Shown here one piece after another: positions 59,603 to 60,634 of a DNA stretch of 64,000 bases. Position 1 is the stretch's first letter; each line of letters opens with the position of its first letter. The position numbers were made by a program, and so were the translations under genes. Under the pieces are notes generated by a model. It was not told the DNA's origin. It saw only the letters and a program-made list of their open reading frames with translations, and made no database searches. The stretch covers positions 248,001-312,000 of the IMG/VR virus record IMGVR_UViG_3300042879_006196, one strand, 5' to 3'.

Positions 59603-60634
59603 ATGCTAAAATCTAAAGCTTTCACTTTAATAGAGCTTTTGGTGGTAATTGCCATCATAGCCATTCTCGCCGCAATTCTGTTCCCTGTTTTCGCTCAAGC
59701 AAAATTAGCCGCTAAAAAAGCGTCTGATTTAAGCAATGTTAAACAAATGGGTCTTGGTATTACTTTATATACAGGTGACAATGATGATATGTATCCTTCT
59801 GCTTACTATCACAGAGCTTTTAATCCTGCTCTTGGTGGAACCAACGCTGGATATATTCACTGGTCAGGCATGGTGATGCCTTATGTTAAAAACGTACAAA
59901 TGTTTGTATCACCTGGTGATACCATTCGTGGTCATGCTCCAACATGTTTCTCTTCAGCTGATAACAATAGTGGCGCAGGTGCTCCAGGCGGACAGGCAGC
60001 AAACGTATGTACAGCTAACCCTGCAATTGTTCCACCTCAATTTGTACGAGGTGGTGCGATTGTGGATGAGCAAGTTCCCCGCATTTCTTACACTGTTAAT
60101 TCTTTGGTAATTCCTAGATACCGAAATATTGGTGATGTCAATAGAGGCATTTCTTTGGTGAGCCAAACTCAGTTGGATAATGTTTCAAACATCATCTTGC
60201 TTGCTGGATTTACAAGAAATCTTCCCTGTCTTTCATCAGCTTCTATCACTTCAACGACTAGAAGTGCATCGCACCGATCAACCAATGCAGTCACAAGAGA
60301 CTCAGCAAATACTCAGGTTTATTTTGGTAGTCAAGAAGACGGGGCTTCACGACCTTCTAGTTTGTTTGCTCTGAATTGGAACAATCTTGCTTCTAGTAAT
60401 ATTTTCAATTTATGTGCAACAAATCCACGAACAGATTACCCTCTCATTGTGTATCATGGTTATAACAATTGGAATAACTCTGGTGATAATTATGGCATGG
60501 CAGATGGTTCTGCTAAATATCGACCATTCAGACAAACAATTGCTCCAACAAACTATCTTTGGGGGACAAGAGCGTATACTGATGGCAATCTTCCTATCTT
60601 AGATCCAGTGTCTGGCTTGCCAGTGCAAGGTTAA
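59603..60634 (+). CDS. prepilin-type N-terminal cleavage/methylation protein with a C-terminal H...DG-like motif
   Basis: KA/[42 protein letters not shown]....Y..D.DD.YP; C-terminal H...[10 protein letters not shown]. Confidence 0.92.
   Translation: [343 protein letters not shown]

What the first reader, a model, noticed from the sequence alone, without database searches (positions are those of the whole stretch)
59603..60634. Phage-encoded Armatimonadota-style prepilin: host clue and possible pilus hijack
Seen: an intact class III signal (A/[9 protein letters not shown]) followed by [18 protein letters not shown].GL and a C-terminal [10 protein letters not shown]. From recall, this exact style is the expanded prepilin family of Armatimonadota (Fimbriimonas-like), related to planctomycete DUF1559 proteins. 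The gene is GC-richer than its neighbours and has its own terminator. Inference: the host is an armatimonad, a phylum with hardly any described phages, and the pilin may be built into host pili to block superinfection or alter adhesion.
Basis: partly seen in the sequence, partly recalled or inferred. Interest (0 to 1): 0.75.

Follow-up and report, generated by a model that had tools for sequence, protein, structure and literature searches.

The report
Jumbo phage carries host-like pilin genes
A 347-kb freshwater phage carries an intact, strongly conserved copy of a pilus-subunit gene taken from Fimbriimonadales (Armatimonadota) bacteria, next to a fragment of their pilus pore protein, which points to the phage's host and suggests it tampers with the host's pili.

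Summary
Window 59603..60634 (+) encodes a 343-aa prepilin with an intact class III signal. The window lies in a 347,392-bp, 33.6% GC phage record with 23 tRNAs and no integrase.

The gene comes from Fimbriimonadales. It is 92% identical in protein (81% in DNA) to a gene on a cellular contig of a Lac Pavin Fimbriimonadales MAG. In the tree it sits deep inside Fimbriimonadaceae. These genomes hold at least 32 and 41 paralogs.

The capture is old and the gene is kept by selection:
- A related phage has it in the same position at 92% identity, with dN 0.06 and dS 1.4.
- GC3 is 27%, close to the phage's own genes.
- A 42-nt upstream block is 41/42 identical between the two phages.

The phage has no prepilin peptidase, pilus ATPase or secretin, so it must use the host's. 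It does carry a second host-like prepilin. The gene 420 bp upstream mimics the N-terminus of the host pilus secretin PilQ. Other low-GC IMG/VR viral contigs (largest 358 kb) carry a third pilin type.

The host assignment is likely but has no independent support (no CRISPR match). Expression and function are untested. The near-identity to the host protein fits a faithful stand-in subunit better than a divergent receptor replacement.

The parts
59603..60634 (+). Prepilin gene ('pilin 1'), 343 aa. Leader MLKSKA, then predicted cleavage before F7, with E11 at +5. Hydrophobic and amphipathic helix at residues 9-59. Globular head with the ADGS motif at residues 300-303.
   Evidence: ORF. PF07963 and TIGR02532 match. 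AlphaFold2 model has pLDDT 93.6 and pTM 0.90. Best solved-structure matches are all pilins or pseudopilins, at weak Z of 4.6 or less. AlphaFold DB matches are Fimbriimonas prepilins and DUF1559 proteins. 92% aa identity to the Fimbriimonadales MAG gene on L010.
59526..59567 (+). Conserved upstream block holding a sigma-70-like promoter candidate: TTCAAA at 59531-59536, an 18-nt spacer, CATAAT at 59555-59560. It lies in the divergent intergenic region shared with the minus-strand ORF 59212..59535.
   Evidence: 41 of 42 positions are identical to phage contig L046, although synonymous sites of the flanking genes are saturated. The block is unique in the 347-kb genome. The hexamer pair was listed by the promoter scan, which is not significant on its own.
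60638..60659 (.). GC-rich hairpin between the convergent pilin gene and ORF 60658..61113. Terminator-like, with a U-run on the minus-strand side only.
   Evidence: dG -18.5 (+ strand) and -15.7 (- strand) kcal/mol, z -4.4 and -3.3. Not called by the consensus scan. Not conserved in L046.
58612..59181 (+). Secreted 189-aa protein: signal peptide, STN/N0-type domain, DPLLIAMLL..QNYFGSPEP motif and a short Gly-rich tail. It copies the N-terminal ~140 residues of the host type IV pilus secretin PilQ and lacks the pore domain.
   Evidence: PF07660 STN 1e-6 and the PilQ model N-terminus. 37% identity, E 1e-24, collinear with residues 27-163 of an 817-aa secretin that sits in a pilM..pilP-like-pilQ-aroK-aroB operon of Fimbriimonas genome G002. 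48% identity to the homologous contig-end gene of G001. Conserved in three related phage lineages.
59212..59535 (-). Small ORF (107 aa) of unknown function between the PilQ-fragment gene and the pilin gene. It shares the divergent promoter region with the pilin.
   Evidence: No Pfam or PHROG match. Homologs occupy the same position in L046 (42% aa) and L041-L043.
60658..61113 (-). Convergent 151-aa ORF of unknown function. It starts with GTG and the N-terminus MWYKFSKL. It marks the downstream edge of the pilin insertion site.
   Evidence: ORF. No family match. 72.5% aa identity in L046. One of eight ORFs in the genome that begin MWY[KR][YF].

Best explanation
The gene is a functional, host-derived prepilin carried as an accessory gene by a large, apparently virulent freshwater phage whose host is most likely a Fimbriimonadales bacterium (Armatimonadota).

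**Shown**
- An ancestor of this phage and of a related phage captured one particular, conserved member of the host's large DUF1559-like prepilin family.
- The codons have since been fully recoded to the phage's AT-rich usage, while the protein stayed about 92% identical to the host version under strong purifying selection.
- The phage has no prepilin peptidase, assembly ATPase or secretin.

**Inferred**
- During infection the gene is transcribed from its own conserved sigma-70-like promoter.
- The protein inserts into the inner membrane and is cut before Phe7 by the host prepilin peptidase.
- The host's type IV pilus (or related pseudopilus) machinery polymerises it as a faithful stand-in for the host subunit.
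- With a second host-like prepilin and a secreted copy of the PilQ secretin N-terminus encoded just upstream, it forms a phage gene set aimed at the host pilus apparatus.

**My lean on the effect.** The phage controls the supply and make-up of pilus subunits in the infected cell. This resembles the way cyanophage psbA stands in for a host protein. I lean against a divergent, phage-resistant subunit. The PilQ fragment may at the same time decouple or block the outer-membrane channel. Whether the net result is keeping a pilus function running or shutting piliation down to exclude other phages is not resolved.
For: **Origin**
- The best hits lie on cellular contigs with housekeeping neighbours such as MreB, GH127, IMPDH and gyrB.
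- L010, from a Fimbriimonadales MAG at 47% GC, is 92% identical in protein and 81% in DNA. Only the pilin region of that contig matches the phage.
- In the tree the two phage copies are sisters (support 92). They sit inside a 99-supported clade with L010 and P0001, nested in Fimbriimonadaceae.

**Selection**
- Phage against phage, dN is 0.062 and dS is 1.42. Six neighbouring genes show dN 0.15-0.51.
- Phage against host, dN is 0.072 and dS is 1.48.
- GC3 is 27%.
- Only 7 substitutions are shared by both phages against the nearest hosts, and there are no indels.
- The upstream block is 41/42 identical between the phages.

**Dependence on the host**
- The phage has no PF01478, PF00437 or PF00263 match.
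- G001 and G002 each have one prepilin peptidase, several full-length pilus/secretion ATPase genes (10-13 PF00437 matches each) and four secretin-domain matches.

**The wider gene set**
- Pilin 2 lies at G000:147447-148430. Its orthologs are 76% and 67% identical in G002 and G001.
- Pilin 2 is syntenic in two more phage contigs, with dN 0.056.
- The upstream gene mimics the PilQ N-terminus.
- A third pilin type occurs in 11 other low-GC IMG/VR viral contigs (16-358 kb), and its best host match is the gene next to the pilin-1 ortholog.

**Fold and precedent**
- The fold is a pilin core with a large insert.
- Phage-encoded pilus subunits are a described defence mechanism (PMC12952977).
Against: - No expression data exist. 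The two 'RNA' runs that hold the region are probably DNA.
- Nothing shows that the protein is cleaved or assembled.
- The function of the whole DUF1559-like family is unknown (PMC10632474).
- The residue before the cleavage site is Ala, where Gly is usual. The host orthologs share this.
- Related phages L041-L043 keep the PilQ fragment but lack this pilin, so it is dispensable.
- Host link: no CRISPR spacer match; no overlap between the top runs holding the phage and those holding the candidate host contig; a GC gap of 13 or more points.
- Complex prediction between the phage proteins and the host PilP-like protein gave no answer.
Confidence: 0.6

Rival explanations
1. Superinfection exclusion. 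The phage pilin, helped by the PilQ N-terminal fragment, changes, masks or shuts down the host pilus that this phage or competing phages use as receptor. This could work by poisoning assembly through overdose or by decoupling the secretin. Further phages then cannot adsorb to an infected cell.
For: - Prophage FimU copies protect by replacing a pilus-tip subunit, and PilA-like genes occur in virulent phages (PMC12952977).
- A secretin fragment without a pore domain is more easily read as an inhibitor than as a spare part.
- Several unrelated low-GC viral-contig lineages hold pilins of the same host family. That fits competition between phages for one receptor.
Against: - The described replacement subunits are about 50% identical to the host's and carry extra loops.
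- Here the copy is 92% identical, has no indels and only 7 phage-specific changes, and the whole head domain is under purifying selection.
- No evidence shows that pili are the receptor.
- No integrase was found, so the protection would have to act within a lytic cycle.
Confidence: 0.3
2. The host is not an armatimonad. The phage infects a low-GC freshwater bacterium such as a member of Bacteroidota, and the pilin genes are old imports that say little about the present host.
For: - Phage GC is 33.6%, against 47-62% in Fimbriimonadales loci.
- The phage encodes ribosomal protein bS21. Published freshwater bS21 huge phages were assigned to Bacteroidetes (PMC9723584).
- No CRISPR match was found, and AhcY carries no armatimonad signal.
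Against: - Three separate pilus genes point to Fimbriimonadales, and they depend on machinery the phage lacks.
- Holding 92% identity while synonymous sites are saturated implies continuing interaction with that lineage's apparatus.
- 23 tRNA genes fit a phage whose codon usage differs from its host's.
- The bS21 searches gave no Bacteroidota signal.
- Shine-Dalgarno use is weak in both the phage and the Fimbriimonadales loci, so they are compatible.
Confidence: 0.15
3. The gene is a passenger or an artefact: a recently picked-up, functionless host fragment, or a chimeric assembly of phage and host reads.
For: The gene is GC-richer than its flanks. It lies in the opposite orientation to its neighbours and is absent from one related lineage.
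Against: - GC3 is 27%, as in phage genes.
- dN/dS is about 0.04 over saturated dS.
- The gene is syntenic in independently assembled related phages.
- A single contig spans the region with no differences, and at least 18 runs hold it.
- The upstream element is conserved.
Confidence: 0.03

Closest known systems
Prophage-encoded FimU (P-FimU) and phage PilA-like proteins of Pseudomonas and Xylella phages (Sztanko et al., Cell Rep 2026, PMC12952977)
   Same: A phage carries a homolog of a host type IV pilus subunit. The subunit has to be processed and assembled by host machinery. Some examples are in virulent phages.
   Different: - Those copies are divergent: about 50% identity, with extra loops or truncation. 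They act by being unrecognisable to competing phages.
- This one is 92% identical to the host protein and under strong purifying selection.
- It belongs to a different, much larger pilin type (343 aa, DUF1559-like).
- It sits in a 347-kb phage of a different host phylum and comes with a secretin N-terminal fragment.
DUF1559 / H-X9-DG prepilin-like proteins of Planctomycetota, Verrucomicrobiota and Armatimonadota (PF07596, TIGR04294)
   Same: - Class III signal followed by [9 protein letters not shown]/K.
- Large head domain and a C-terminal (A)DGS motif.
- Dozens of paralogs per genome.
- Fold matches to DUF1559 models.
- Relatives at 45-50% identity carry PF07596.
   Different: - This protein does not reach the PF07596 or TIGR04294 models itself.
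- The His-to-DG spacing is 15, not 9.
- It is encoded by a phage.
Cyanophage psbA-type auxiliary genes
   Same: The gene is host-derived and nested in the host clade. The protein is kept near-identical to the host's under purifying selection while codon usage drifts to the phage's composition. It is present in some related phages and absent in others.
   Different: The product is a membrane-anchored fibre subunit of unknown role, not a metabolic enzyme. No expression or turnover data exist.
Small phage proteins that inhibit type IV pili (Tip, Aqs1, PlzR, PfsE)
   Same: Phage products aimed at the host pilus apparatus. This is the possible role of the neighbouring PilQ N-terminal fragment.
   Different: Those are small novel proteins that bind PilB, PilZ or PilC. 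Here the candidates are copies of host structural parts.

Membership tests
Type IV pilin-like proteins (prepilin-type N-terminal cleavage/methylation, PF07963 / TIGR02532) | Short basic leader, then (G/A)|F-x-L-x-E with Glu at +5 | tested here: met
   [11 protein letters not shown]. PF07963 6e-8 and TIGR02532 5e-7. The -1 residue is Ala, as in the host orthologs.
Type IV pilin-like proteins (prepilin-type N-terminal cleavage/methylation, PF07963 / TIGR02532) | Long N-terminal helix (hydrophobic, then amphipathic) packed on a beta-sheet head | tested here: met
   AlphaFold2 model with pLDDT 93.6 and a helix at residues 9-59. The top 20 solved-structure matches are pilins or pseudopilins spanning residues 32-307, but Z is only 4.6 or less.
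Type IV pilin-like proteins (prepilin-type N-terminal cleavage/methylation, PF07963 / TIGR02532) | Cleavage and N-methylation by a prepilin peptidase, then polymerisation by an assembly ATPase and platform | not testable with these tools
   The phage has none of these genes. The candidate host genomes G001 and G002 have them.
DUF1559 (PF07596) with H-X9-DG domain (TIGR04294) | Match to the PF07596 model | tested here: not met
   The window protein has no hit even at E<=1. 50 of 75 aligned relatives do match, best 1e-16. Fold matches to DUF1559 models have E 1e-9 to 1e-6. So it is homologous at superfamily level but not a model-level member.
DUF1559 (PF07596) with H-X9-DG domain (TIGR04294) | C-terminal His, nine residues, Asp-Gly | tested here: not met
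   H285 is 15 residues before D301-G302. TIGR04294 is not among the NCBIfam hits. The ADGS part is conserved, with D301 invariant.
DUF1559 (PF07596) with H-X9-DG domain (TIGR04294) | Large paralogous expansion in the genomes that carry it | tested here: met
   At least 32 matches in G001 and 41 in G002. 22,517 clusters at E<=1e-10 in the representative library.
Phage-encoded replacement pilus subunit for anti-phage defence (P-FimU type) | Phage copy of a host pilus subunit | tested here: met
Phage-encoded replacement pilus subunit for anti-phage defence (P-FimU type) | Surface diverged from the host subunit (extra loops, low identity) so that phages cannot bind | tested here: not met
   92% identity, no indels, 7 shared changes.
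Phage-encoded replacement pilus subunit for anti-phage defence (P-FimU type) | Blocks adsorption of pilus-dependent phages | not testable with these tools
   Needs a culture system.
Host-derived auxiliary gene of the psbA type | Nested within the host clade, purifying selection, codon usage shifted to the phage's | tested here: met
   Tree. dN/dS about 0.04. GC3 27% against 51-71% in hosts.
Host-derived auxiliary gene of the psbA type | Expressed during infection | tested here: inconclusive
   Only runs that are probably DNA hold the region. The conserved promoter-like block is indirect support.

The most novel reading that the evidence does not exclude
Large freshwater phages of Armatimonadota take over their host's type IV pilus by expressing near-perfect copies of its own fibre subunits together with a decoy of the secretin's N-terminal domain. 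On this reading the DUF1559-like pilins are the fibre, and probably the receptor, around which several unrelated large-phage lineages compete, which would explain why they repeatedly captured members of the same host pilin group. This would give the first functional handle on the DUF1559-like pilin family and the first host-linked huge phages for this phylum.
Probability: 0.3. Interest if true: 0.8.

Novelty: new variant of a known kind. Interest (0 to 1): 0.62.

Why it matters
- **Host anchor.** It gives a concrete, testable host anchor (Fimbriimonadales) for a group of abundant, uncultured 350-kb-class lake phages. I found no paper in the held library on phages of this phylum.
- **A different evolutionary pattern.** Phage-encoded pilus subunits were described only recently, as divergent mimics. 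Here the pattern is the opposite: near-identity kept by selection. A secretin fragment is added, which suggests a different way of manipulating pili.
- **An entry point to an unknown family.** The DUF1559-like prepilins are among the largest protein families of unknown function in Planctomycetota and Armatimonadota. The particular paralogs that phages copy again and again are the obvious ones to study first.

Tried and rejected
- **CRISPR link.** Cas1 was found in 82 of 228 Fimbriimonadales genomes, but not in G001, the genome with the closest ortholog (G002 was not among the genomes listed with a match). About 50 arrays with about 780 repeats were fetched. The best match to the phage was 17 nt, which is chance level.
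- **Expression.** The only 'RNA' runs holding the region are flagged as probably DNA and are fragmentary.
- **Co-occurrence.** The top runs for the phage and for the host contig L010 do not overlap. They share only the habitat, freshwater lakes.
- **Complex prediction.** Host PilP-like protein plus pilin head plus PilQ fragment scored 0.24, under the mark. This is no evidence either way.
- **Other genes as host markers.** AhcY has phage-lineage relatives at 75-79% and cellular hits at about 60-63% from mixed phyla. The bS21 searches gave no phylum signal.
- **Phage hallmark genes by Pfam.** Terminase_6N and Gp23 gave nothing, and the Gp23 control also failed. The phage nature rests on tail-spike and virion protein families, the endolysin, 23 tRNAs and the record's completeness estimate.
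- **Known phages.** No tblastn match of the pilin in 50,697 GenBank phage records. No structural analogue among reference viral models.
- **Solved structures.** Only the N-terminal helix matches by sequence or Foldseek.
- **Recurrent promoter.** I rejected the idea that the upstream block is a repeated phage promoter, because it is unique in the genome.
- **'Tandem host pair' idea, toned down.** A second prepilin lies next to the pilin-1 ortholog in 9 of 15 host loci, but which paralog it is varies.
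Full report
**1. What is at the coordinates**

Window 59603..60634 (+) is an uninterrupted ORF of 343 aa. Pfam N_methyl (6e-8) and TIGR02532 (5e-7) match the N-terminus. Every other pilin or pseudopilin model matches only the first 30-66 residues.

The gene has 40.8% GC, against 27-38% for its neighbours. Third-position GC is 27%, close to the phage's usual 22% or so. The extra GC therefore reflects the Ala/Gly-rich protein and not recent arrival.

A strong hairpin at 60638-60659 follows the stop codon (dG -18.5, z -4.4). 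It is shared with the convergent ORF 60658..61113. Its U-run is on the other strand, and it is not conserved in the related phage.

**2. The genome around it**

The window is bases 248001-312000 of a 347,392-bp IMG/VR virus record, estimated 99% complete. Its features:
- 33.6% GC throughout, with no high-GC flank.
- 23 tRNA genes, no tyrosine integrase and no terminal repeat.
- Tail-spike and virion structural protein families, GroEL, a GH108 endolysin and a DprA-like phage family in the window.
- A bS21 gene elsewhere in the genome.

I read it as a virulent jumbo phage, and the 'provirus' label as a by-product of trimming.

The 5-kb stretch around the gene is present at about 100% of sampled words in at least 18 lake-water runs. 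One contig spans it without a single difference.

**3. Where the gene comes from**

The protein search returned thousands of relatives. Those that carry a name are almost all Fimbriimonadaceae, Fimbriimonas or Armatimonadota, at 43-72% identity. The closer hits (77-91%) are unnamed metagenome proteins, so I looked up their contigs.

These contigs are cellular, not viral:
- Their neighbours include PAS/GGDEF, PPK2, KdpD, IMPDH, gyrB, ClpB and ABC transporters.
- Their GC is 49-58%.

The species-representative genome scan found the best match on a contig of a Lac Pavin Fimbriimonadales MAG (L010, 47% GC). That contig has MreB, GH127 and RRM-protein neighbours. The match is 92% in protein and 81% in DNA, and only the pilin part of the contig matches the phage.

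In a maximum-likelihood tree of 113 sequences, the window's pilin and that of a related phage are sisters (support 92). They sit inside a 99-supported clade with L010 and P0001. That clade nests several levels deep among Fimbriimonadaceae orthologs.

The family is expanded in these bacteria, with at least 32 and 41 matches in the two genomes searched. Against 1.84 billion representatives, 22,517 clusters match at E<=1e-10 but only 50 at E<=1e-30. So the captured gene belongs to one narrow, conserved subfamily of a very large superfamily.

**4. Related phages and selection**

Two independently assembled 33% GC contigs (L046, L047) are syntenic with window 48.3-64 kb. Their gene order is: AhcY ... 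PilQ-fragment gene, small minus-strand ORF, 343-aa pilin, 151-aa ORF, RmlC ... PurA, ThyX. A third lineage (L041-L043) has the same neighbourhood without the pilin. The pilin is therefore an accessory gene with a presence/absence pattern.

Divergence between the two pilin-bearing phages:

| Comparison | dN | dS |
|---|---|---|
| Pilin, phage vs phage | 0.062 | 1.42 |
| Six neighbouring genes, phage vs phage | 0.15-0.51 | similar or higher |
| Pilin, phage vs host L010 | 0.072 | 1.48 |

Only seven substitutions are shared by both phage copies against the two nearest cellular sequences. Three of them are not seen in other hosts (L2, I49M, W287Y). There are no indels.

A 42-nt block upstream (59526-59567) is 41/42 identical between the phages, although neutral sites are saturated. 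It contains TTCAAA (TTGAAA in L046), an 18-nt spacer and CATAAT, and it occurs once in the genome.

Together these results exclude a passenger gene or an assembly chimera. They show an old capture that has been maintained.

**5. Structure and family**

With a 75-sequence alignment, AlphaFold2 gives pLDDT 93.6 and pTM 0.90. The model has a helix at residues 9-59 and a mixed head domain whose last strands carry the ADGS motif.
- **Solved structures:** these match only through the N-terminal helix by sequence and by Foldseek.
- **Independent aligner:** its top 20 matches are all pilins or pseudopilins (EpsG, PilA4, ComP, PulG ...) spanning residues 32-307, at weak Z of 4.6 or less. I read this as a pilin core with a large insert.
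- **AlphaFold DB:** matches are Fimbriimonas prepilins, DUF1559 proteins and 'T2SS protein G' models (E 7e-12 to 1e-6, TM 0.4-0.65).
- **Family models:** the window protein does not reach PF07596 or TIGR04294, and its His-to-DG spacing is 15, not 9. Yet 50 of 75 aligned relatives do hit PF07596.
- **Viral proteins:** no reference viral model and no GenBank phage has anything similar.

**6. The phage needs host machinery and carries more pilus parts**

The phage has no prepilin peptidase, no T2SSE-type ATPase and no secretin. The two Fimbriimonadales genomes each have one peptidase, several full-length ATPase genes (10-13 PF00437 matches each) and four secretin-domain matches.

A second prepilin (327 aa) lies at G000:147447-148430. 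Its orthologs are 76% and 67% identical in those genomes. It is syntenic in two further phage contigs at 89-94% identity, with dN 0.056.

The gene 420 bp upstream of the pilin (58612..59181) encodes a signal peptide, an STN/N0-type domain, a DPLLIAMLL..QNYFGSPEP motif and a short Gly-rich tail.
- Its only match in each host genome is the N-terminus of one secretin.
- In G002 this is an 817-aa protein in a pilM ... pilP-like, pilQ, aroK, aroB operon, which is the type IV pilus secretin. The phage protein aligns collinearly with its residues 27-163 (37% identity, E 1e-24).
- In G001 the homologous gene runs off a contig end and is 48% identical.
- The fragment is conserved in all three related phage lineages.

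**7. Other phages**

A profile scan of IMG/VR found 11 other low-GC (31-33%) viral contigs, three of them large (358, 300 and 261 kb). They carry a third full-length prepilin type (298-322 aa; 37-39% identical to pilin 1; gene GC 39-44%). Their loci are not syntenic with this phage. One such locus has an HNH endonuclease, a tail-fibre-like gene and ORFans around it.

In both host genomes the best match of this third type is the prepilin gene immediately next to the pilin-1 ortholog (52% and 45%). The make-up of that host cluster varies between genomes.

**8. Host inference**

For Fimbriimonadales:
- Three pilus-related genes point there, and the phage depends on machinery it does not carry.
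- The protein is held at 92% identity despite saturated synonymous change.
- The many tRNAs fit a mismatch in codon usage between phage and host.
- Shine-Dalgarno use is weak in both the phage and the Fimbriimonadales loci.

Against, or missing:
- No spacer match.
- No overlap between the top-run lists.
- No signal from AhcY or bS21.
- A GC gap of 13 or more points.
- Freshwater bS21-encoding huge phages have been assigned to Bacteroidetes (PMC9723584), though nothing links this phage to that set.

I put the armatimonad host at about 0.8.

**9. Mechanism**

*Shown:* host origin, intact prepilin features, purifying selection, a conserved upstream element, absence of phage-encoded machinery, and the company of a second pilin and a PilQ N-terminal copy.

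*Inferred:* the protein is expressed in the infected cell, cut by the host peptidase and fed into the host's pilus or pseudopilus assembly.

The closest precedent is the prophage FimU and phage PilA-like proteins. These replace a pilus subunit and block phages that bind it (PMC12952977). They are divergent mimics. This gene is kept almost identical to the host's, head domain included, which is the pattern of a stand-in auxiliary gene such as cyanophage psbA.

I therefore favour a faithful substitute that lets the phage control subunit supply or composition. The pore-less PilQ fragment is the more likely inhibitory element. Exclusion of other phages by overdose or blockade remains a serious rival.

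Complex prediction gave no answer. The function of the DUF1559-like family itself is unknown (PMC10632474).

**10. Verdict**

The family call and gene origin are correct. The host call is probable but has no independent support. The functional idea is plausible, untested and needs refinement.

This is a new variant of a recently described kind (phage-encoded pilus subunits), in a new pilin family, a new host phylum and a different evolutionary regime.

Noticed in passing
window 58612-59181 (+): Secreted 189-aa protein that copies the N-terminal ~140 residues of the host type IV pilus secretin PilQ (STN domain plus linker motif plus short Gly-rich tail) and has no pore domain. It is conserved in three related phage lineages, including one that lacks the pilin.
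   Followed up: yes
G000:C1:147447-148430 (-), outside the window (L002 928..1911): Second Fimbriimonadales-type prepilin (327 aa, 42.9% GC, ends ...HADGSAKY...). Orthologs are 76% and 67% identical in two host genomes. It is syntenic in two more IMG/VR phage contigs. It lies about 1.4 kb from a capsid-like gene that has the highest GC in the genome.
   Followed up: partly
L144-L154, L182 (IMG/VR contigs of 16-358 kb): A third full-length prepilin type (298-322 aa) in 11 low-GC viral contigs not syntenic with this phage (L144, at 66% GC, is set aside as probably cellular). Its best host match is the gene adjacent to the pilin-1 ortholog.
   Followed up: partly
window 55189-58014 (+) and 60658-61113 (-); six more ORFs elsewhere in G000: Eight ORFs start with GTG and the N-terminus MWY[KR][YF]. 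Four of them share MWYRYCRLIIA(G/K)KEHII. This may be a common N-terminal tag or a paralog family. Function unknown.
   Followed up: partly
G000:C1 3450, 46049, 49978, 51255, 52738, 53511, 58949, 61344 (+), outside the window: Eight copies of a cassette, seven preceded by a GC-rich hairpin (ccctccaaaggggagg), with the motif TTTTCCAGGTTTAACATAATCTGATTATAATAGAT and a start codon about 15 nt after the TTAACATAAT core. It looks like a repeated terminator-promoter unit with almost no leader.
   Followed up: partly
G000:C1 13968-173310 (tRNAs); G000:C1:86284-86439 (-) (bS21): 23 tRNA genes cover nearly all amino acids, mostly with A/U-decoding anticodons, and the genome has a ribosomal protein bS21 gene. 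No integrase and no terminal repeat were found.
   Followed up: partly
window 48950-50182 (+): S-adenosylhomocysteine hydrolase. Its nearest relatives are copies on unnamed metagenome contigs, probably related phages (75-79%, on contigs up to 281 kb; only L046/L047 were checked). Cellular hits are only about 60-63% identical and come from mixed phyla. It looks like an old auxiliary gene of this phage lineage with no host signal.
   Followed up: yes
window 1160-9538 (+), 11677-15381 (+), 18230-19849 (+): A 2792-aa and a 1234-aa protein with repeated tail-spike or virion-structural matches, and a phage GroEL.
   Followed up: no
L042 5188-7404 (related phage contig): ThyX gene interrupted by an intein with an HNH domain (738 aa: Thy1, Intein_splicing, HNH, Thy1).
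   Followed up: no
L014 / L004: A contig filed under a 'Synechococcus sp. UW140' MAG carries a Fimbriimonadaceae-type pilin (72% identity). The nearly identical contig L004 has flagellar export genes. The contig is probably mis-binned.
   Followed up: no
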